A DNA stretch of 55,758 nt, filler included, from Platydemus manokwari (Eukaryota): NCBI GenBank assembly GCA_037951405.1. It is 5 parts of 5 records of this genome, joined end to end, with 100 filler letters (N's around TTAATTAATTAA, not from the genome) between each part and the next. Parts side by side here need not be neighbours in the genome. Positions count along the whole stretch, not along the records: positions 36,154 to 46,251 come from JBBMOY011169767.1; 4 more parts are not named here. One strand, given 5' to 3'. Under the pieces are notes generated by a model. It was not told where the DNA came from. It searched no databases and saw only the letters and a list, made by a program, of their open reading frames with translations. Each line of letters starts with the position of its first letter. The first letter of the stretch is position 1. Shown piece after piece: positions 36,154 through 46,423 of this stretch. The position numbers were made by a program, and so were the translations under genes.

Positions 36154-36448
36154 TGGATGTCAAAATGGCCAATTTTGAAGCGTTTAAACCACTCGAAACA
36201 TTGTGTTTTCGCAAGAGCATGTTTGCCATAGAATTTCACGAGTAAACAATGACTTTCAGCTGCAGTTTTCTTTGCAAAAAAGTGGCTCAGCAAGACTTGA
36301 TGCGTATAAACAAATCAAACAATGTTGACTGGTTTTGATAGCTTATAAATAGAGCTTCAAAATGACGTGTATGTTAACGATTTGCTACAGCACACACACA
36401 AGTGTTTACATCTGCTGTCAAATTCTGGTTATTAAGTTATAGATCCAA
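36154..36448 (-). mobile_element. mariner copy 2, 5' end with Mos1-like transposase N-terminus
   Basis: KKTAAESHCLLVKFYGKHALAKTQCFEWFKRFKIGHFD resembles the Mos1 HTH (KKTAAESHRML...WFQRFKSGDFD). The terminus ends at 36448, followed by TA. Confidence 0.9.
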
Positions 36449-37240
36449 TACGTAAAATTACATTTCAAAGAAAATTTGTTATTTTAGATAAATTGTATAA
36501 AAATGATCCATCTTCATTTTTATTTATAAAGATTTCTAGGAATTCAGGATATACGAAGCAATTTTAACCTAATCCTGTAAGGCGCTGTTATGACCTTCAA
36601 TAAAGCATATAAATGATTGATTTATAGCTAAATATCACATATTAAATATAAATTAATATTGAAAATGTTAATTATATCTTTGTATTACAAGTTTTGCAAC
36701 TAGGGTTGTCACACTTCAGCTTTGGAATTGAAATAAGAAGAAATCTTGACAACGCTAAATTTTGTATAATAATTAATGTTTAAATATTTACTTTTAATTT
36801 TACAATTTTTTTTACCAATTTGTAATATTCGATTTTTTTGAGCAGTTCAATTGATCGCTCAATTTTGAAGATGTTGAATAGAAAGAAAACAGAAATGACA
36901 AATCAAATTCATATTCTGATCAAAACATTTTCATAATGTGTTATGGTTTATAAATTTATGATTATGAAATTATGAATCGATTTAGTGATCACTTGACACA
37001 TAATTTCGTAATTGTTAAAAAATCATTTTTCAATCTTTAAAAAGTGTCATCGCGACTTTTAAATAATTTAAATGTCTTTTAATTTGGTCCATTTCCATTT
37101 AAATCGAAAGTTTAAAGTTCTGTTTTGTATAACATTTAATTTCAAATACCTAAACCGTTTATCATGTGCTTGAATTAAAACTTAATATTTATTTAAATAA
37201 ACTTTATAAATTTTTGCAAAACATAGAAAAACATAAAAAG

Positions 37241-37309
37241 AAATTGTTATATGGTCTATTTTACCAAATACAATAACAACAAAACTTCACTCTGTAAAAA
37301 TATATTTAA
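37241..37309 (+). CDS. Micro-exon gene, candidate exon A (69 nt, phase 1-1)
   Basis: Weak acceptor aaaaag, donor gtatat; (x)IVIWSILPNTITTKLHSVKIYL; 66-nt intron to exon B. Confidence 0.3.
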
Positions 37310-37375
37310 GTATATGAGGTCATTGATATTTTTCATTGAGATTGTTTATATTTTATTTATAAAAATTCATTTCAG

Positions 37376-37444
37376 GAAAAATTAAATTTTACAATCGAAA
37401 TGTTGAAGAAGAAGCAAAGCGAGTATGCAAGGAAATTTGCTCAG
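37376..37444 (+). CDS. Micro-exon gene, exon B (69 nt, phase 1-1)
   Basis: catttcag / CAG-gtaatg; (x)KIKFYNRNVEEEAKRVCKEICS. Confidence 0.65.
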
Positions 37445-38386
37445 GTAATGAATATTTTCAATTCGATCTGAGTATTGCGAGAGTCTGATTTGGGAGGAAC
37501 TGATAATTCTTCTGTAAAATTAACACGATTGTATGTGCTATAGTTGTCCAGTTGTAAAATACTTTGGTTATCAATCACAGTATTCCCATATCATTGATTT
37601 TAAGCTAAATAAATTATTATCCAATCATTGATCAGTTATAATAATGTAGATTATTTTAATTAAATTTAATTTTTTCATTTCCTTACAAGTAAATAAATGT
37701 TTGCTGTAGCGAATTCATTAATTTGACTTTGGAAATTTGTCAATTGAAGCTATCTCATAAAATAAAATCAATTTAACAACACGTGGAAAACATTTTACCA
37801 GTTTTATACATTTTATTAACCTATTTAACATTGACAATTCGGCAGGAAAGATCAAAATCAGAATCTCTCATAGGTTTTTGGAGGAGAATGTTGTAAATGA
37901 AAGAAATTGTGATACAGATTATAACTATGATAAATTGATGGTTGAATATTTAGAAAAAATATTGATATTATTATTTCTCTATTTTTAGTGGAGTCTGCAC
38001 AACTGTGTTGTTTAATATTTACGCATTTCAAATTTGCAATTAACAATAACCTGTACTGAAAAATAATTTCGTTAATTATAAAATCAATTAAAAATTTCTT
38101 TAATCTGGTCTAAATGATGTTACTAATGGTGTCAGTGTAGTTTTTAGGCCATAATTAATGATATGATGCAAACATATTCTCTCACAATATCTTAAACGTC
38201 TATCAAAATATATTGTTAGATATTTATGAATCTTATCCGGTCGACAAAAATATTAACATAAAATAATATTTTGATGATTGATGTTTGAAATTTATATTTA
38301 AATCATTAATTATTTGAATATTATATTTAAATATCTCTCATATTGATATTTAATAAAGATATTTAAGAAATCGTTTTTCATTTTAG

Positions 38387-38491
38387 AACAAATGCCAAAT
38401 ATTTTTTCAAGCACCGTTATTTCGAATTTAAGAGTTCAAAGAAATTACCAAGATAATAAATCAACAAATGGCAATAATAATACTCAAATTG
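38387..38491 (+). CDS. Micro-exon gene, exon C (105 nt; extracellular stalk with N-glycosylation sequons NKS and NNT; internal ATG at 38392)
   Basis: cattttag / G-gtcatt; (E)QMPNIFSSTVISNLRVQRNYQDNKSTNGNNNTQI. Confidence 0.65.
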
Positions 38492-38497
38492 GTCATT

Positions 38498-38499
<2 letters not shown>

Positions 38500-38560
<61 letters not shown>
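38500..38560 (+). repeat. (ATT)n microsatellite in the 100-nt intron before the TM exon
   Basis: About 20 ATT units. Confidence 0.95.
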
Positions 38561-38561
<1 letters not shown>

Positions 38562-38591
38562 ATTTGTAAAAAAATAATCTTTTCAATTCAG

Positions 38592-38642
38592 CTGTACCAA
38601 TAGTCTGTTTCATTTTTGGCCTTTTAATTGGTTATATTCCGA
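38592..38642 (+). CDS. Micro-exon gene, exon D (51 nt; transmembrane helix)
   Basis: caattcag / A-gtaaga; (A)VPIVCFIFGLLIGYIP, uncharged and hydrophobic. Confidence 0.75.
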
Positions 38643-39635
38643 GTAAGATATTTTGAAAATTATTTATTTAGTGTAAAGCATAACATTAATTATTTAATTT
38701 GCACATGAAGACAACATTATTAAAATGACGATTTTGCAAGTTCAACACTATGACTCATTATATGTATTTAATCTATAGAGAAAGCGCTGTTTTAGATCAT
38801 GATAATACTATCGAAAAATTGTAAAAATGCAATAGAATGCGATATTTAATATATAGATTTTGACAGAGTTTATTGACATAGGTTGATGTCAAGGATTCAT
38901 GATCTGAATATGATTTTAAAAATAATCTTTCGTCATATCAACTGCTGAACAATATTTTAACATTTGAAAATAAAATTCTCAGAGAGATTGAAATATTGCT
39001 CGTTTTATTCTATTATTTATATATATTCTTTCTTAGAACTATCTTATTTGATATTTTGAATCAGCTTTCTAGTTGCCTGTTTTGGCAGAATTAAGAAACA
39101 ATAGCTTCATATAGTGGAGACAGATAAAATAATCTTAATGAAATTGAATATAATTGTCTCGGTTAAAATTGTGAAAAAGATGTTTATTATAATTAAATCT
39201 TTTGAAATCCATGTTTCTTCAATTGATGTAAAGCTTCATGATTTATTTCGAATTTGTAATTACAACCTAATTGAAGCAAACAATTATATTGTCACTCCAG
39301 ACAGAAAGCGATAAGTTTTGTGTCACTCATGTAAATACCTATTGTTTGAATATTATGGAAAAAAAGGCTGCGTGTGGTCAGAAAAGATTTAAATTATCTA
39401 TTCTAGGATTTAAATTGAAAACGATATCGCTTGAATAAATGATTAATTATAAGTGAAAATTCAAAGTTAGAAGTTTTTATTATATTATCATATGACGTAC
39501 GTAATGTTGGAATCTTGGTTAAATATTTATAAATACTAAAATTTATTTAATAATCTGATTAAATTGAAACTTTGTTTGATAAATATTTTTGTTCTAGTCT
39601 ATTAAATTGAATAAGAAAGTTATTTTCTATTTCAG

Positions 39636-39665
39636 CTATCATCAAGAAATGTAAGAAGAACAAAA
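39636..39665 (+). CDS. Micro-exon gene, exon E (30 nt, or 15 nt via gtaaga at 39651; basic stop-transfer)
   Basis: ctatttcag / gtatat; (T)IIKKCKKNK. Both donors keep phase 1. Confidence 0.7.
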
Positions 39666-40139
39666 GTATATTTTGATTTTTTAAAATTGGACTTTACCTA
39701 TATTATTAATGTATTCGTTCAACAAAAAAGTAAAAATAACTTGTTTCAGGAAGACAAAAATATATAAACATGTTATAACAATGAAATCGTTTTCTTGACA
39801 TCATAACTTTGATGACATGCATATTAATTGTCATATGTACACCACATCTCTTGTAATATGCATCTTTCATTTGATACAAGCTAGATTTTTAATTACCACT
39901 CCTTATTGCATAATAATTCATGATCTTGTGAAATACCAGTTTTACTGATTCAATGTTGTAAGCCGCTTCTTTTTGACAAAGCACATCCTGCAATCTAATT
40001 GGGAATTAACACACAAAATTATGTTTAAATAAAATTATTTCAACAATTTATTGTAAAATAATGGGTTACAGAATATGTTCAATTCAATTTTTATAAATTA
40101 TATTTATCATTTTCAAACTCACAGAGACATTGTTTTAAG

Positions 40140-40220
40140 GGAGAGGTCATAATGTTGTACAAACTATGCAAAATAATGACGAAGAAGCGGAGCTATTAAC
40201 AAATACAATAAATATAAAAG
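40140..40220 (+). CDS. Micro-exon gene, exon F (81 nt)
   Basis: gttttaag / AAG-gtaaaa; (R)RGHNVVQTMQNNDEEAELLTNTINIK. Confidence 0.6.
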
Positions 40221-40711
40221 GTAAAAAATATTTAAAAATATAAATGTTCTATCATAATACAAATAAATAATAATCCAAATAAGAATGATGATCACTATTC
40301 ATAATTTCTTGAAGATAAATGAGTCGAAAATACAATTTAGTCTATACCAAAATACATGTCTTTACAGATCGTGAAAGATGATTATAGTCCCACAATAAAA
40401 ACGAGAAAGTAATCTGCTATTCTATTTAAATCATGATAAAATGGCCAAACTTATCTGACTCGAAAAGATTTATTATTCTATACAATATACAAGATCGTCT
40501 CATGGTATTATTACTACCACATTATTACTACTGGAATGAATATTTTCACAATGTGTACTCTCATGATTTGTACTGGTTTCATTCTTTCTGAATCGTCGTA
40601 AAAATATCCATTACTTTGAGATACAAAAATTGTGCTTCTCTAATCTTAATCTTAATTTTTTAAAAATATATCCATTTCAAAAGAAATATTTTATTCATTA
40701 TTAAAATTTAG

Positions 40712-40753
40712 AAACCGACAATGCAAGAGAGAAAAGATTTGAGAGTATTTCAA
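40712..40753 (+). CDS. Micro-exon gene, exon G (42 nt)
   Basis: aaatttag / gtaaag; (E)TDNAREKRFESIS. Confidence 0.65.
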
Positions 40754-40873
40754 GTAAAGATTTTTAAAAAGAAGAGTGCAGATTTTAAAACAGCATTTAA
40801 TAAATATGGATATGATTTATTATTTTTAAATAATCATATTTTAAATTTATTTTAATTGTTGATTTATTAATAG

Positions 40874-40912
40874 GTTCGATAAATTGTGTAAACAGATTTG
40901 AAATCATAAAAG
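40874..40912 (+). CDS. Micro-exon gene, exon H (39 nt)
   Basis: ttaatag / AAG-gtaatg; (S)SINCVNRFEIIK. Confidence 0.7.
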
Positions 40913-41237
40913 GTAATGTTTATTCATTGTTTGAATGAATTTGCAATTTGGGTCGGTTTAAAAATAAATAGTGAAATATGGACGAATTCAAGTACATCAT
41001 TGATTAGAGTATTTAGGAGGGTTTACAGTTCCGGATTATAATTCTAATCAACTACCCTCACTGTATTAACGTTTAGTTTGATAATAAATATTGTCATAAT
41101 AATAATTTTAAATTGAATATTTAACGTGAAGTGGTAATAAATTTTATTTAATCTTTTATCAATATCAAGGGACAGATGAAAACGTCTATCTTAGCTTCAT
41201 ATTGTTATGACTTATGTGTGTAATTTATGTTTTTTAG

Positions 41238-41288
41238 AGATAACTGAACTAATAATTAATCCAAAATGGGATTCACTGGGATTGAAAA
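41238..41288 (+). CDS. Micro-exon gene, exon I (51 nt)
   Basis: gttttttag / gtaagt (consensus donor); (E)ITELIINPKWDSLGLK. Confidence 0.7.
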
Positions 41289-42432
41289 GTAAGTACAATA
41301 TTTTTGCAGAATTGTTTATTAGTATTAAATTATAATTATGAATTTACTTTATTTTTTAAATATTCCTTTGACCGAAGTACATGAATTTTCACTGAGAAAC
41401 ACTAACTTTGTAAACTAAATATTATATCGATAGAATGACGATAAAAGTAGGCTATTCGAGATTTTTGAATATGGCAATCGCGTTAAATATGGGTGTTGCA
41501 AATGAAATGAAAGTTGTTTTAAACTATCATTTTTAAAGAAATCAAAGAGTTTTAACATCAAAAATAATGACACTCCAATAAATTATGTACTTTTCTTAAT
41601 TTTTCACAACATCTTTCAATATTCATACCAGTGTTTTGATTTCATTTTAGTGCTATCTTGACAGTCTTTGCGGTGTGTGGTCTAGTATTGTCTTGAAGGA
41701 GTGAAACCCATCAACCGAAGCGACTTCAAATCACAAATCATATTTTCAACTATTACTCTGCATACCCGAAAGTCATATTTTCTCAGAGGTTCTCTAACTT
41801 AGGCCTCGTACATCTCGATTAGTGTTTAAGAACAAAAAGTGTCGTTGAGATCCAAATTATCATGTCCCTTTCATACACGCACAATTATCTCGGGAATCCT
41901 CACTCGCTTTTGATCTCGCATTAAGGTAAAATAAGGTGTCAAAAATTCGTATTTGTGTCTACTTTACAATCAATTTTACGATTATCAAAAAGACAAAAAT
42001 AATTTAAGTAAAAACAATTACTTAAAACATGCATAACATAAGCTTTTTAATAGTATATAACACTTCGCCAAACATCAAAAATTATTCTTGGAATTAATAG
42101 TTTTATGAGCTGTAAAAGCTAAAGCAACGATAGAATTGATTGAATAAATTAATAAAACTAACTAGGACTAACTAGCTGGTATTAATTCTCTATATAATCG
42201 TATCTAAGCTTCTCCGAAATTGAACTTATTTTTTTTAATTACATCAATTTCTATAGAAATATTGAATTTATTAACAAAATTTAATAAACAGTGAGGTAAA
42301 AAAATGAAAATCTCAAGGTATTTCAAATAAAGATTTCCAAAAATAAAGTGCAGATTTTTCTAACACCATTTGATAAATATGTATATTATTTGATATTTTT
42401 AAAGAAAATTTTAAAAATTGATTTATAAATAG

Positions 42433-42471
42433 GTTCGACAGAATATGTAGACAGATCCAAACTTTTACAAG
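42433..42471 (+). CDS. Micro-exon gene, exon J (39 nt, paralogue of H)
   Basis: aaatag / AAG-gtgatt; (S)STEYVDRSKLLQ. Confidence 0.65.
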
Positions 42472-42886
42472 GTGATTATTGTTCATTTTTGTTTGATAAA
42501 ATAAAATTATAATGTATTGCGGTATAAAGATACAGACCTGAGGATGTAGTAGATTAAAATGGTTACCTATTCAAATACACTATTCATTGAAATATTTGAA
42601 GTTGTATTTTAAGTTCTCTAAGACACTGATAAGTATCATGATTTATTATAAGTATTATAAGAAAAAAAGATGATAAATAATTTTAGATATACTCAGTTTG
42701 GAAATTATATTAATTAGCGCGGGACATAAACTGTATTGGATTTTGTTTATTTAATAGTAGTGAAAATTCAATGTTTGGCAGTTTATTTTTTATTTTTATA
42801 CTATTTTAAATACTATTATACTATGATAAATAAATATTTTTATTCTAAAATATTATATTGACTAAGAAAGTTATTTTGTAATTTAG

Positions 42887-42925
42887 CTATCACCCGGTCT
42901 TACAAAAAATGTAACAAGATCAAAA
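42887..42925 (+). CDS. Micro-exon gene, exon K (39 nt, paralogue of E with a 9-nt in-frame indel)
   Basis: aatttag / gtatat; (A)ITRSYKKCNKIK. Flanks resemble 39595-39720. Confidence 0.6.
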
Positions 42926-43329
42926 GTATATTTTTATTTTATTTAAATGGTCATTTAACTTATTTAATTCTATTTATTCCATTCTAAAATTTATTAATTC
43001 AAATAACGTGCAAAATACCAAGCTTATTTCATGTATTTTTATATTATGTAAGAAAAATATGTTATTGTTTTCTTCATATAACATCTTTGGTGTTATATTT
43101 ATTTAAATAATTTAAGATCTTGCAAATTTTGGTGGAATTAATTTTCTTAAACCTATCCTCGGTTTGTATTTTCATTGAAATTGTGTAATAATTTAAAATC
43201 ATTTCATTGAGAGACATTGATTTCGATTCTTATAATATTTTTTTAGATTTTTAAATACTAAAAGAAATTTGATGAATTTTTCTGAAATTTGATGGACTTT
43301 CTAAGAAAATTTCCACACTAGGTTTGAAT

Positions 43330-44210
43330 GAAATCAGATTCTTACCACTTTTGTTATTAATCTACAATTTTATAACCCGATATTGATTTATCTTCATCTT
43401 ATATTGAATCCAACAGGTAAGGTTGGAATTCCTCTAATTTCTTATTTCATTGTTGTATTTTGTTACTTTGAAATTTTTAGAGTTTAACGTTTTATTTTCA
43501 AATTCCAGAGAATTATCAAAAAATCTCATTATGAAATTCTTATAATATTATTTCAAAAGTAGGTCCTCCGTTTCTCTGTCTATTTTAAAGGTTTACCATT
43601 ATTCCGTTGATTAAGCTGCACATGTCTTTTGTTACAATTCTGCAAAATTATTTGTCCTCAACTACTCAAGCATTGATTCTGCTCACATCTTCATGAATAC
43701 ATTTAAAATAATCATCGTCTGATTTCTGGTACAAATATAATAGATTCTTGAATATATATCCTAATAATCTCTATTAATTCTCTGCAAACATTTTGAGGAA
43801 TTTTTCTTCCTAATCTTCTATATAGCTTCTCTATTCATCTACTGCCTCTTCATTCTTTCGCAAATATTCTTTTTAATTTCTCTCCATCATCCAAATCTAC
43901 CACAGCTATTACTTTTTCACAGATATTATTATTTTCTATTTTCATAATAGATTTTTCTTTATATTTGACATCAATTACCTGCTTCGATGAGTGTATCCCT
44001 GAGTTGCAATTAAATTATTCTAATTGTATTTTACTTCTTGTATCTCTCTCTCTTATTTTGATTCTTCTACAGTTTCATCATATATTTGTTTTACACTTCT
44101 TATTCCGAGAGAATATTGTTTGTATTATTATTGTTCCTGTGATTACTAAATGTTCACTGGGTTCCATCTTGCAATATATGACTGTTTATCATTTTACTCG
44201 ATTCAAAAAA
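43330..44210 (-). mobile_element. Highly decayed Gypsy-like pol remnant, antisense in intron K-L
   Basis: Purine-rich minus strand with broken reading frames loosely resembling the RNaseH-integrase junction (...IFSR, VPEIRR, GGP). Many stops. Confidence 0.35.
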
Positions 44211-44558
44211 TGAGGATATAATTCTTTTTATTTTTCTTCTCATGTTGTCTTGATAATTAAAGACTTAATTCCTTAATTTTCGGAAAAATTGTGGAATTTA
44301 TATAATTAATTGAATAAAGTATTAATATAACAAACTAGTTTATCCAATCTTAATTAAAAACATTTATAAAAATTTTTAATTTAATAATAAATTTATTTAA
44401 CGACGAAACAAAGAAAAAATTAGAATATATGTATCAAGTAAAGATTTTTAAAAATAAAATTGGGGATTTTCTAAGCAGCATTTATTAAACTTGTGGAGAA
44501 TTTGTTATTTTTAAATAACCATATTTTAAATTCGTTTTAAATATTGATTTAATAACAG

Positions 44559-44597
44559 GATTCACAGAACCTACGAGAGAAACTCTACCTTCAGAAG
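44559..44597 (+). CDS. Micro-exon gene, exon L (39 nt, paralogue of H/J)
   Basis: ataacag / AAG-gtgata; (R)FTEPTRETLPSE. Confidence 0.65.
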
Positions 44598-44768
44598 GTG
44601 ATATTTATTCATTGTATTTTGATTAAATAAATTTGCAAGTTACTTCGGTATAAAGGCCTATCAAACACTTATGAGGACTATTAGGTTCTCGTTAGTTAAC
44701 AAAATATGATGATAAAGTTTCGATCATGAAAAAAAAATCTACATATAAAAAGAAATATTACATTTCAG

Positions 44769-44810
44769 ACGTCGTCAGTAGAGGTTGGTATGAACGTTTA
44801 AAGAATAACA
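44769..44810 (+). CDS. Micro-exon gene, exon M (42 nt)
   Basis: catttcag / gtaaaa; (D)VVSRGWYERLKNN. Confidence 0.6.
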
Positions 44811-45112
44811 GTAAAAATTGTAACGAATAAATAGTTTTTATCAAAATTGCTTTGAGTAAAAATCTTACAAACATAATTATATACACAGCTTTAATTTTAG
44901 AAATGGACATAATATTTTGATAATATTTTTTAAATTTCCTTCATTGAAATATATTATGTATTGAAAATATATATTATTGTGAAAATACTTTCAAATTGAA
45001 ATTTTAAGGCGTCGTGACAATAAATTTATAAAAATATAAACGAATTTTATAAAAATTTCTAAATTAAGCCTCATATTGCTAGTAATCATGTCTATAATTT
45101 TTGTTTTGTTAG

Positions 45113-45201
45113 AGAGCCATAAACCAAAAGGAAATCAACGTTGTGTATCACTACCATTGAAAGGTTGCAAAGTGGATAGCAGATATTTCCTTGATGCTTA
45201 G
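45113..45201 (+). CDS. Micro-exon gene, terminal exon N (paralogue of I, reads through to TAG)
   Basis: ttttgttag; (K)SHKPKGNQRCVSLPLKGCKVDSRYFLDA*; AATAAA at 45271-45276. Confidence 0.65.
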
Positions 45202-46060
45202 AATATAAATATTGATTCACTTTAATTTTAAATATTACTTTTATGAAAATGCATCAATTTTGAAAAAACCAATAAATTTGTAAAATATATATTTTTGCAA
45301 TTCAAAAGAAATTCAATCAAATTTATACTGCCTTCTCAGTTTGCATTAATTAAATTTAAAATAATTTTAAAATCCTGTGTATTGTATTGAAAATACATAA
45401 AATCTTCAAAAATTTAATATTAAATTAAGTATTCATTTGTGATGAATAAAAAGTTTATTAACAATGAAAGGCTTATATTGTCATTCAATAAAAAATAATT
45501 TTTAGAATAGGTTATAAAGATAATTCTTATGCAGAAGTTTATTTAATGTAATATGTACAATGATTTAAAATATTAAACAGCCTACTGAGAAAATAGATCT
45601 TTAAATATTGTGAATATATCATCTCTGTTCATTCGTCTTTTAAATTTCTAGTCCACACTAAAATAATATTAATATAAGCAATCTCGTCTTTTTAGATAAG
45701 GAATACCAACCGTTTAATCATAATGTTTTAAAGAATAACTGGAATACTCCCGAAAAACTAATTTAAAACAACATTGAAAATAAAGTCATTGTCAGTGGTA
45801 GCTACTTCATTCAAATTTTGAAATTAGTGAGAATGATAATTTAAATGATTTCAGGAAATATGTATTTATTATTATTTAAATTTATTATTATTGAATTAAT
45901 ATATTTTAATGAAAATATAAAATAAAAATCCTGAAAATCTACTTTAAATTGCCTCTAGCTTCATTGTTCAATTATTCACAGAGATCTATATTTTCATGAA
46001 AACTTGCATTTTGCTATAAAACACTTTATCTACTGAAATTTAGTAATTTTTATCCATATA

Positions 46061-46423
46061 TTGGGTCTATAACTTAATAACCGGTATTTGAACCCAGATG
46101 TAAACACTTGTGTGTGTGCTGTCGCAAATCATTAACATACACGTCATTTTGAAGCTTTATTCATAAGCTATCACAATCAGTCAACATTGTTTGATTTGTT
46201 TATACGCATCATATTTGTTTTAATTATGGAACATTTTGAAAATTGGCGAAANNNNNNNNNNNNNNNNNNNNNNNNNNNNNNNNNNNNNNNNNNNNTTAAT
46301 TAATTAANNNNNNNNNNNNNNNNNNNNNNNNNNNNNNNNNNNNNNNNNNNNTAAGATCTTCAATTTAATATTTAAAAATGAAAAGCCAATTTAAAAAAGG
46401 CCATTATTTTTGCACCAACCTAA
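46061..46423 (+). mobile_element. mariner copy 3 (both ends; interior in gap)
   Basis: TA-TTGGGTCTATAACTTAATAACCGG ... GGCCATTATTTTTGCACCAACCTAA-TA. The 5' UTR matches copies 1 and 2; ATG near 46226. Confidence 0.85.
46252..46351. other. Assembly spacer (44N-TTAATTAATTAA-44N)
   Basis: Same fixed spacer. Confidence 0.95.

What the first reader, a model, noticed from the sequence alone, without database searches (positions are those of the whole stretch)
37241..45276. Hidden symmetric micro-exon gene: single-pass membrane protein with a modular, skippable cytoplasmic tail
Seen in sequence: twelve consecutive AG/GT-bounded exons B-M (69, 105, 51, 30, 81, 42, 39, 51, 39, 39, 39, 42 nt) are all multiples of 3, all phase 1-1 and stop-free, followed by terminal exon N and AATAAA. 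Spliced from ATG 38392 they give 213 aa: MPNIFSSTVISNLRVQRNYQDNKSTNGNNNTQ-IAVPIVCFIFGLLIGYIPTII-KKCKKNKR-RGHNVV...SRYFLDA*. The TM helix and its positive-inside stop-transfer appear only after splicing C+D+E, which argues against chance. Every exon ends in A or G, so any skipping combination stays in frame and cannot create a junction stop. Established knowledge: symmetric micro-exon arrays generate protein variation in schistosome MEGs, and immune receptor tails are often encoded by small phase-1 exons. Inference: a lineage-specific variable receptor or transmembrane adaptor (type I if upstream exons supply a signal peptide, type III/LAT-like if ATG 38392 is the start) whose tail is diversified by combinatorial splicing. 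The ORF track shows only exon C. The exons were selected by eye, so selection bias is possible.
Basis: partly seen in the sequence, partly recalled or inferred. Interest (0 to 1): 0.92.

Follow-up and report, generated by a model that had tools for sequence, protein, structure and literature searches.

The report
Probable orphan gene of small duplicated exons
The listed exons are all present, and although a chain like this is expected by chance in such AT-rich DNA, diverged internal duplicates show that most of them are probably real exons of an unannotated, lineage-specific gene, while its expression, membrane topology and "combinatorial splicing" remain untested.

Summary
All 13 exons exist exactly as described. 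They are bounded by AG and GT. Exons B to M are multiples of 3, phase 1-1 and stop-free. Spliced from ATG 38392 they give the stated 213 aa.

Shuffled sequence of this 24% GC composition gives about 85 such segments per 10 kb and chains of about 33.

Independent evidence partly rescues the gene. The 3' two-thirds consists of diverged internal duplicates:
- block 1 holds E, F, G, H and I;
- block 2 holds a dead G' and J;
- block 3 holds K, a decayed G'', L, M and N.

Between blocks, exon cores are far more diverged than the adjoining intron (H/L 36% against 81%, p = 3e-7). The dips in identity coincide with the AG/GT boundaries. Exon length and frame are kept, whereas G' shows what decay looks like. 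Exon I is a former terminal exon, homologous to N plus its 3' UTR. It gained a GTAAGT donor and lost the AATAAA.

Codon-position composition is coding-like (P = 0.004).

No RNA data and no homologues were found. Exons C and D, which carry the start codon and the membrane helix, have no independent support. Combinatorial splicing is untested.

Verdict: probably a real orphan small-exon gene (about 0.5) of moderate interest.

The parts
37376..37444 (+). Exon B (69 nt). A possible 5' exon and weakly supported. It is open in phase 1 but has no in-frame ATG. In another frame it carries an ATG at 37400 that would give a 28-codon upstream ORF ending in exon C.
   Evidence: no duplicate, no homologue
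38387..38491 (+). Exon C (105 nt) with the candidate start ATG at 38392. It encodes a 32-aa polar, Asn-rich N-terminus. Its donor, GTCATT, is weak and is followed at once by (ATT)20.
   Evidence: no homologue; no independent support
38592..38642 (+). Exon D (51 nt), the hydrophobic helix core. Its best 15-residue Kyte-Doolittle window averages 2.56. The donor is GTAAGA.
   Evidence: top 1.1% of 358 null candidates; no duplicate
39636..39665 (+). Exon E (30 nt), the basic juxtamembrane cluster. It is a paralogue of exon K.
   Evidence: 26/30 identical to K; flanks conserved
40140..40220 (+). Exon F (81 nt). Its acceptor is AAG, which is unusual, and it has no counterpart in block 3.
40712..40753 (+). 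Exon G (42 nt). Its copies in blocks 2 and 3 have decayed.
40874..40912 (+). Exon H (39 nt), the first of three homologous 39-nt exons (H, J, L).
41238..41288 (+). Exon I (51 nt), homologous to the first 51 nt of terminal exon N. A 3-nt insertion creates a GTAAGT donor. If the donor is read through, a stop follows 16 codons later. The site homologous to the AATAAA is lost.
42285..42326 (+). G', a dead copy of exon G in block 2. The acceptor AG has become AA, the donor GT has become AT, and there is an in-phase TGA.
   Evidence: and sequence
42433..42471 (+). Exon J (39 nt), paralogue of H and L.
42887..42925 (+). Exon K (39 nt), paralogue of E with an in-frame 9-nt insertion.
44414..44437 (+). 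G'', a decayed copy of exon G in block 3. It has a 2-nt insertion and has lost the ancestral acceptor. A 24-nt phase 1-1 open remnant with a poor AAG acceptor and a GTAAAG donor is still possible.
   Evidence: and sequence
44559..44597 (+). Exon L (39 nt, 44% GC), the most diverged H-type exon. It shares 14/39 positions with H, while the flanks are 81% identical.
44769..44810 (+). Exon M (42 nt, 38% GC). It lies in a segment found only in block 3.
45113..45201 (+). Terminal exon N, coding part, with the stop TAG at 45199-45201.
45271..45276 (+). AATAAA poly(A) signal, about 70 nt after the stop.
39541..41423 (+). Duplication block 1 (E, F, G, H, I).
42208..42688 (+). Duplication block 2, a remnant (G', J).
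42792..45293 (+). Duplication block 3 (K, G'', L, M, N and 3' UTR).

Best explanation
The + strand carries a real, or recently real, spliced and probably protein-coding orphan gene. It is built from small symmetric phase 1-1 exons.

Its 3' two-thirds arose by internal tandem duplication of a block with the layout [basic 30-nt exon ... 42-nt exon, 39-nt exon ... terminal exon plus 3' UTR]:
- Block 1 (39541-41423) holds E, F, G, H and I.
- Block 2 (42208-42688) keeps only J beside a dead G'.
- Block 3 (42792-45293) holds K, a decayed G'', L, M, N and the poly(A) signal.

After the duplication, the proximal copy of the terminal exon became the internal exon I. It gained a GTAAGT donor through a 3-nt insertion and lost the AATAAA. 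This links the blocks into one transcript.

Exon cores have diverged much faster than the intron next to them, while splice sites, length and frame were kept. That means either diversifying selection or a very weakly constrained, probably disordered, polypeptide.

The conceptual product is 213 aa:
- a 32-aa polar N-terminus;
- one hydrophobic helix (exon D);
- a KKCKKNKRR cluster;
- a charged tail of about 160 aa.
By the positive-inside rule the N-terminus would lie outside and the C-terminus inside.

Shown here: the exon anatomy, the duplications and the exon-bounded divergence. Inferred: transcription, the reading frame as protein, the membrane topology, and which exons are joined in the mRNA.
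For: - Exons and translation were verified.
- Block homologies: 39541-39825 matches 42792-43103, 40634-41113 matches 42208-42688, 40664-40962 matches 44352-44654, and 41034-41423 matches 44919-45293. E-values run from 1e-28 to 1e-47.
- Exon against flank identity: H/L 14/39 against 92/113 in 60-nt flanks (p = 3e-7). J/L 19/39 against 81/106 (p = 0.002). G 63% against the G-H intron 81%. I/N 59% against 78% upstream and 76% in the 3' UTR-like part.
- Pooled over blocks 1 and 3, exons are 57.6% identical and non-exon columns 72.1% (p = 1.3e-4). Sliding-window minima (0.30-0.37) fall exactly on exon H and on the I/N coding part.
- H, J and L contain no gaps, while the introns do. The K insertion is in frame, at 9 nt.
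- G' shows what neutral decay looks like: both splice sites are lost and a stop has appeared.
- Under neutral simulation, the chance that J, L, K and the N part all stay open is about 0.04. The chance that their splice dinucleotides all survive is 0.01-0.05.
- Pooled pN is 0.47 against pS 0.29, and pS is close to the intron divergence.
- Purines at codon position 1 reach 0.665 against 0.545 +/- 0.045 in stop-free decoys (P = 0.004). G at position 1 gives P = 0.015. GC at positions 1 and 2 is 35% and 34%, while GC at position 3 is 26%, equal to background.
- Alignment A3 shows the 3-nt insertion that makes GTAAGT in exon I, and the AATAAA replaced at the homologous site.
- Other diverged contigs of the same DNA run overlap exons G, I and K. 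The changes listed for them keep the frame open.
Against: - There is no RNA evidence. No RNA run holds the 6-kb stretch or the terminal exon.
- No homologue was found for exon C, and no exon piece hit Pfam.
- The whole spliced protein could not be searched.
- Exons B, C, D, F and M have no duplicate. The C donor (GTCATT) and the F acceptor (AAG) are weak.
- The excess of identity at codon position 3 is not significant (p = 0.23).
- dN/dS rests on only about 110 sites.
- Exon GC (32.5%) is only slightly above that of stop-free decoys (28 +/- 8%).
- Fast exon divergence also fits non-coding exons.
Confidence: 0.5

Rival explanations
1. There is no gene. The chain is a selection artefact in AT-rich DNA, and the duplicated blocks are just neutral segmental duplications.
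For: - Shuffles and the opposite strand give comparable numbers of symmetric, stop-free, AG/GT-bounded segments and longer chains.
- About ten unused decoys lie on the same strand in the same phase.
- Hydrophobic and Lys-rich peptides arise easily at this composition. 10% of the decoys have a 15-residue Kyte-Doolittle window of 2.0 or more.
- There is no RNA and no homologue.
Against: - Neutral duplicates should diverge evenly. Instead the dips in identity are bounded by the AG/GT sites (p = 3e-7 for H/L), and the exons contain no indels.
- The joint retention of frame and splice sites is improbable.
- The purine periodicity is frame-specific.
- The changes in exon I (donor gained, AATAAA lost) fit what a former terminal exon needs to become internal.
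Confidence: 0.15
2. The locus is transcribed and spliced but does not produce a functional protein. It would be either a long non-coding RNA whose exon sequences are unconstrained, or a decaying pseudogene or partial gene copy.
For: - Exon cores evolve faster than introns, as in non-coding host genes.
- pN is at least as high as pS.
- The changes listed in paralogous contigs run about 10 non-synonymous to 3 synonymous, close to neutral.
- G' and G'' have decayed.
- There is no homologue. Exon B would add an upstream ORF.
Against: - All ancestral exon types (30, 42, 39 and 51 nt) are multiples of 3 and open in one common phase.
- The K insertion is 9 nt.
- H, J and L keep exactly 39 nt despite up to 64% divergence.
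- The codon-position signal is present.
- L became richer in GC (44%), against the AT bias of the genome.
Confidence: 0.2
3. The gene is real, but the blocks are used as alternatives rather than all in a row or in free combination. Either exon D joins E (block 1) or K (block 3), or H, J and L are mutually exclusive. This is a variant of the main explanation and concerns the splicing pattern only.
For: - E and K are the best-conserved exon pair (26/30, pN 0.13 below pS 0.25). Both would supply the basic stop-transfer cluster directly after the helix exon.
- H, J and L have identical length and phase and strongly conserved upstream intron, as in clusters of mutually exclusive exons.
- Reading through exon I reaches a stop after 16 codons, so block 1 could still end a protein.
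Against: - Block 1 has lost the AATAAA and gained a consensus donor in exon I. That argues for splicing onward.
- All lengths are multiples of 3, so nothing forces exclusivity.
- No docking or selector complementarity stood out among the inverted repeats.
Confidence: 0.15
4. The repeated units belong to a dispersed repeat or transposon-borne family. The apparent exon structure would be a property of that repeat.
For: - At 80% likeness many other contigs of the same DNA run lie on parts of the stretch (303 laid, 174 under 90% alike). They include diverged copies over 40600-40877 and over the D-E intron.
- Mariner remnants flank the locus.
Against: - Most of the pile-ups are 40-nt AT-rich patches.
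- The units lie in one orientation and in gene order, ending in a terminal exon and a poly(A) signal.
- No transposon protein domain was found inside the locus.
Confidence: 0.08

Closest known systems
Schistosome micro-exon genes (MEGs)
   Same: - Most of the coding region is made of small symmetric exons separated by much longer introns.
- They are expanded by duplication, evolve at an accelerated rate, and sit in transposon-rich surroundings.
- The symmetric exons would allow in-frame exon skipping (PMC4350168; bioRxiv 10.1101/2023.06.21.545858).
   Different: - MEG exons are mostly far smaller (6-81 bp, mostly about 15 bp). Here they are 30-105 nt.
- All MEG products have an N-terminal signal peptide and are secreted. 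Here no signal peptide was found, and the only hydrophobic segment starts at residue 33 and is followed by a basic cluster.
- MEGs are reported as restricted to flatworms. The organism here is unknown.
- No sequence similarity could be tested, and there is no expression evidence.
Hessian fly small secreted salivary gland protein genes
   Same: They show the reverse conservation pattern, in which non-coding parts (introns, UTRs) are more conserved among paralogues than the coding region (PMC2955719).
   Different: - Those are separate tandem genes encoding secreted proteins with conserved signal peptides.
- Here the paralogous units are exons inside one putative gene, and the product looks membrane-anchored.
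Tandem exon duplication and clusters of mutually exclusive exons (general knowledge, from memory)
   Same: Neighbouring homologous exons share length and phase (H, J and L at 39 nt; E and K) and have conserved flanking intron.
   Different: - Exclusivity is not forced, because all lengths are multiples of 3, and it has not been observed.
- The duplicated unit here includes a former terminal exon and its 3' UTR.
Transmembrane adaptor proteins of the LAT type
   Same: A short N-terminal stub, one helix, a juxtamembrane cysteine, and a long tail without domains that is encoded by small exons.
   Different: - There is no CxxC palmitoylation motif.
- The tail has only 4 tyrosines, one of them in a YxxL context.
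- There is no homology evidence. This is a resemblance only.

Membership tests
Schistosome MEG family | Most of the coding sequence lies in very small symmetric exons (length a multiple of 3) separated by long introns. | tested here: inconclusive
   All 12 internal exons are multiples of 3 and phase 1-1, and the introns are 100-1633 nt. The exons, at 30-105 nt, lie at the upper end of or above the MEG range.
Schistosome MEG family | An N-terminal signal peptide and a secreted product. | tested here: not met
   The hydrophobic segment spans residues 33-53 and is followed by KKCKKNKRR. No upstream ATG exon with a signal-like peptide can be joined in phase.
Schistosome MEG family | Transcripts that differ by skipping of the symmetric exons. 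| not testable with these tools
   No RNA run holds the locus.
Schistosome MEG family | A flatworm host and sequence similarity to a MEG family. | not testable with these tools
   The organism is coded. The spliced protein has no reference and could not be searched. Exon C alone has no homologue.
Tandemly duplicated exon cluster | Adjacent homologous exons of the same length and phase. | tested here: met
   H, J and L are all 39 nt and phase 1-1. E and K are 30 and 39 nt and homologous. Exon I is homologous to the start of N.
Tandemly duplicated exon cluster | Mutually exclusive use in the mRNA. | not testable with these tools
   No RNA data are available.
Single-pass membrane protein (type III / transmembrane adaptor) | One hydrophobic helix of about 20 residues with flanking charges that follow the positive-inside rule. 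| tested here: met
   The best 19-residue Kyte-Doolittle window averages 2.37 at residues 35-53. It is the only window above 1.0, and the basic cluster follows it directly. This depends on exons C, D and E being joined, which has not been shown.
Single-pass membrane protein (type III / transmembrane adaptor) | Juxtamembrane CxxC palmitoylation motif and several tyrosine signalling motifs. | tested here: not met
   There is a single juxtamembrane Cys. The tail has 4 Tyr, one of them in a YxxL context.

The most novel reading that the evidence does not exclude
This is a MEG-like system outside the known secreted flatworm families. It would be a membrane-anchored orphan protein whose small symmetric exon modules are multiplied by internal duplication, driven apart by diversifying selection while their introns stay conserved, and mixed by exon skipping or exon choice to give a variable repertoire. 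It may belong to a small family with further copies in the same genome.
Probability: 0.12. Interest if true: 0.7.

Novelty: new member of a known kind. Interest (0 to 1): 0.35.

Why it matters
If real, this is a gene that ORF-based and homology-based annotation would miss entirely. The longest contiguous ORF covers only exon C.

It also gives a compact example of how a gene grows:
- a 3' block, including the terminal exon, is duplicated internally;
- the old terminal exon is converted into an internal exon;
- exon cores diverge quickly between conserved splice-signal flanks.

The reverse conservation pattern is a practical way to find small exons when no RNA data exist.

The finding does not yet bear on immune-type receptor diversity or on regulated combinatorial splicing. 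Those need transcripts.

Tried and rejected
- **RNA evidence.** Two searches for sequencing runs, one with the 6-kb stretch and one with the terminal exon plus UTR, found only one DNA run.
- **Reads laid on the locus.** Laying that run at 80% likeness gave contigs only, and no splice information.
- **Homology.**
  - Exon C was searched against 1.84 billion cluster representatives. The single weak hit (E = 7e-4) is a repeat protein matching 17 residues, which is chance.
  - The word-indexed search of the exon C ORF found no candidate.
  - Pfam gave nothing for exon pieces or for the other open frames.
- **138-aa open frame at 43797-44210.** It has no homologue and no Pfam family, and I take it to be compositional.
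- **Exact-ORF look-ups.** Four look-ups were not on record, so neither the organism nor paralogous loci could be fetched.
- **RNA families.** Rfam and tRNA scans were empty, apart from one sub-threshold chance hit.
- **Upstream signal-peptide exon.** None found.
- **Block 2.** A search for decayed E- or F-type exons gave only weak matches.
- **Left out.** The spliced 213-aa protein was not searched, folded or run through a topology predictor.

Full report
**The piece.** The stretch 36154-46251 is eukaryotic-looking DNA with 19-32% GC. It holds no long ORF of a known family. The one exception is a mariner HTH fragment at its left edge.

**Checking the observation.**
- B 37376-37444, C 38387-38491, D 38592-38642, E 39636-39665, F 40140-40220, G 40712-40753, H 40874-40912.
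- I 41238-41288, J 42433-42471, K 42887-42925, L 44559-44597, M 44769-44810, N 45113-45201.
- Each is preceded by AG. B to M are followed by GT, and B to M are multiples of 3.
- One common phase (1-1) is open throughout.
AATAAA lies at 45271.
- No ordered pair of exons gives a junction stop.

**Is the chain more than chance? By itself, no.**
- The + strand holds 115 segments of 30-120 nt that are AG/GT-bounded, multiples of 3 and stop-free in phase 1-1.
- The other phases and the other strand hold 92-115. First-order Markov shuffles hold 85 +/- 15.
- The longest compatible chains have 33-37 exons.
- With YAG acceptors and GTR donors required, the + strand in phase 1-1 is only modestly enriched. 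It has 33 candidates and a chain of 20, against 18 +/- 6 and 11.5 +/- 3.6 in shuffles.
- Hydrophobic exons are not rare at this composition. 10% of 358 decoys have a 15-residue Kyte-Doolittle window of 2.0 or more. Exon D, at 2.56, is in the top 1.1%.
- The helix core lies wholly in exon D and the basic cluster wholly in exon E. The claim that they 'appear only after splicing' is overstated.
- The A/G ending of all exons follows from the donor consensus.

**What rescues the gene: internal duplicates.** A self-comparison shows diverged duplications.

| Block 1 | Matches | What it covers |
|---|---|---|
| 39541-39825 | 42792-43103 | E and K |
| 40634-41113 | 42208-42688 | G, H and G', J |
| 40664-40962 | 44352-44654 | G, H and G'', L |
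| 41034-41423 | 44919-45293 | I and N plus its 3' UTR |

The 3' two-thirds of the locus is therefore three copies of one block:
- block 1 holds E, F, G, H and I;
- block 2 is a remnant with G' and J;
- block 3 holds K, G'', L, M and N.

**Exon-bounded divergence.** The alignments show an unusual, sharply bounded pattern.
- The intron next to the exons is 76-85% identical between blocks. The exon cores are much more diverged.
- H against L shares 14/39 positions, while the 60-nt flanks share 92/113 (p = 3e-7).
- J against L shares 19/39, against 81/106 in the flanks (p = 0.002).
- G is 57-63% identical, against 81% for the G-H intron.
- I against N is 59%, against 78% upstream and 76% in the 3' UTR-like part.
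- Sliding windows drop to 0.30-0.37 exactly over exon H, and to 0.44-0.5 over the I/N coding part, between shoulders of 0.8-0.93.
- Pooled, exon columns are 57.6% identical and non-exon columns 72.1% (p = 1.3e-4).
- There is no gap in H, J or L, all exactly 39 nt, although the introns carry indels. The only exon indel is the 9-nt, in-frame insertion in K.

**What decay looks like.** G' in block 2 has lost its AG and its GT and carries an in-phase TGA. G'' in block 3 is frame-shifted by 2 nt and lacks the ancestral acceptor. A neutral simulation gives about 0.04 for J, L, K and the N part all staying open. It gives 0.01-0.05 for all their splice dinucleotides surviving. These segments have therefore been treated by evolution as units bounded by their splice sites.

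**Coding or not?**
- The excess divergence sits at non-synonymous sites. Pooled pN is 0.47 against pS 0.29, and pS is close to the intron divergence. For H/L the figures are 0.77 against 0.29.
- This rests on only about 110 sites. The greater identity at codon position 3 (68% against 55-60%) is not significant (p = 0.23).
- Against stop-free decoys, the chain shows the usual coding periodicity:
  - purine at position 1 is 0.665 against 0.545 +/- 0.045 (P = 0.004);
  - G at position 1 is 0.207 against 0.142 (P = 0.015);
  - GC is 35%, 34% and 26% at positions 1, 2 and 3, with position 3 at background.
- All four ancestral exon types (30, 42, 39 and 51 nt) are multiples of 3 and open in one common phase.
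- I read this as moderately good evidence for a coding frame under diversifying selection or very weak constraint.

**How the gene grew.** Exon I is homologous to the first 51 nt of terminal exon N, and the homology runs on through the 3' UTR up to the poly(A) site. The block 1 copy has a 3-nt insertion that makes a consensus GTAAGT donor. The site homologous to the AATAAA is mutated. These are the two changes needed to turn a duplicated terminal exon into an internal exon, and they favour onward splicing from block 1 into the later blocks. Read-through of exon I would still end 16 codons later, so a short isoform is not excluded.

**The conceptual protein.**
- It has a 32-aa Asn-rich N-terminus with two N-x-S/T sequons.
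- It has one hydrophobic segment (residues 33-53), followed by KKCKKNKRR.
- The tail is 159 aa, with 33 Lys+Arg, 21 Asp+Glu, 4 Tyr and 5 Cys. No second hydrophobic segment is present.
- By the positive-inside rule the N-terminus would be outside and the tail cytoplasmic.
- Strong diversification of a cytoplasmic tail is unexpected. It fits a disordered, weakly constrained tail better than a receptor surface.
- Exons C and D have no duplicate. C has a weak GTCATT donor directly followed by (ATT)20, and no homologue.
- No upstream signal-peptide exon can be joined in phase. Exon B would add an upstream ORF.
- The membrane-protein reading is therefore the weakest part of the model.

**Expression.** No RNA run holds the locus. 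The only holder is one DNA run. At 80% likeness its contigs show further diverged copies over exons G, I and K and over the D-E intron. The changes listed there keep the frame open, with about 10 non-synonymous to 3 synonymous. This points to more family members, or to a very divergent second haplotype. It could not be followed up, because the contigs themselves cannot be read and four exact-ORF look-ups found nothing.

**Comparison with known systems.**
- The architecture resembles schistosome micro-exon genes in its small symmetric exons, long introns, duplication and accelerated evolution (PMC4350168; bioRxiv 10.1101/2023.06.21.545858). It fails their defining signal peptide, and its exons are larger.
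- The reverse conservation pattern, with non-coding parts conserved and coding parts diversified, is known from Hessian fly salivary gland protein genes (PMC2955719).
- Homologous neighbouring exons of equal length and phase are the classic signature of tandem exon duplication.
- The LAT-type adaptor comparison is a resemblance only.

**Verdict.**
- The sequence facts are confirmed.
- Independent evolutionary evidence makes a real small-exon orphan gene the best explanation, at about 0.5.
- The rivals are a non-coding or decaying locus (0.2), pure chance (0.15) and a repeat family (0.08).
- Whether the blocks are used in a row, in free combination or as alternatives is open.
- Interest is moderate. 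It is a well-formed case for transcript work, not yet a discovery.

Noticed in passing
window 36298-36450 and 46059-46211 (with 36154-36293, - strand): A 153-nt inverted repeat, 92% complementary, brackets the whole locus. The left arm adjoins a mariner/Mos1 HTH_48 fragment (E = 4.7e-9) that reads outward on the - strand. The right arm is the same element end followed by a deleted interior. These are two mariner-like remnants facing away from the gene.
   Followed up: partly
window 38500-38560: A perfect (ATT)20 microsatellite starts 8 nt after the proposed donor of exon C. Reading through it gives the poly-Ile ORF seen by the ORF finder. Contigs of the DNA run appear cut there.
   Followed up: no
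window 43400-44250: A T/C-rich block (GC skew -0.37, AT skew -0.26) inside the K-L intron holds the longest open frame of the piece, 138 codons at 43797-44210 and very hydrophobic. It has no homologue and no Pfam family, so it is probably compositional or an old insertion. It has no counterpart in block 1.
   Followed up: partly
window 41650-41930: A GC-richer island (about 32-38% GC) in the I-J intron. It is close to single copy in the DNA run. It has no ORF of note, no Rfam or tRNA hit, and no counterpart in the other blocks.
   Followed up: partly
window 42397 and 42297: The main contig of the DNA run carries a 14-nt insertion (at 42397) and a 1-nt insertion (at 42297) relative to the window, in the G'-J intron. 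The 14 nt fill the gap that block 2 shows against blocks 1 and 3. This is either a polymorphic indel or an assembly slip.
   Followed up: no
window 38949-39420 joined to 42746: One contig of the DNA run (depth about 8.7) matches pieces of the D-E intron, with deletions, and then jumps to just upstream of exon K. This could be a copy or a haplotype lacking blocks 1 and 2. Only 35 nt support the short side, so it may be spurious.
   Followed up: no
window 37400-37444 continuing into exon C: If exon B is spliced to exon C, an ATG at 37400 opens a 28-codon upstream ORF in another frame, ending inside exon C.
   Followed up: no
window 40011-40050, 41569-41580, 42042-42081: Short patches of about 40 nt where 8-16 other contigs of the DNA run pile up with unrelated sequence on both sides. 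They are small dispersed AT-rich repeats inside the introns.
   Followed up: no
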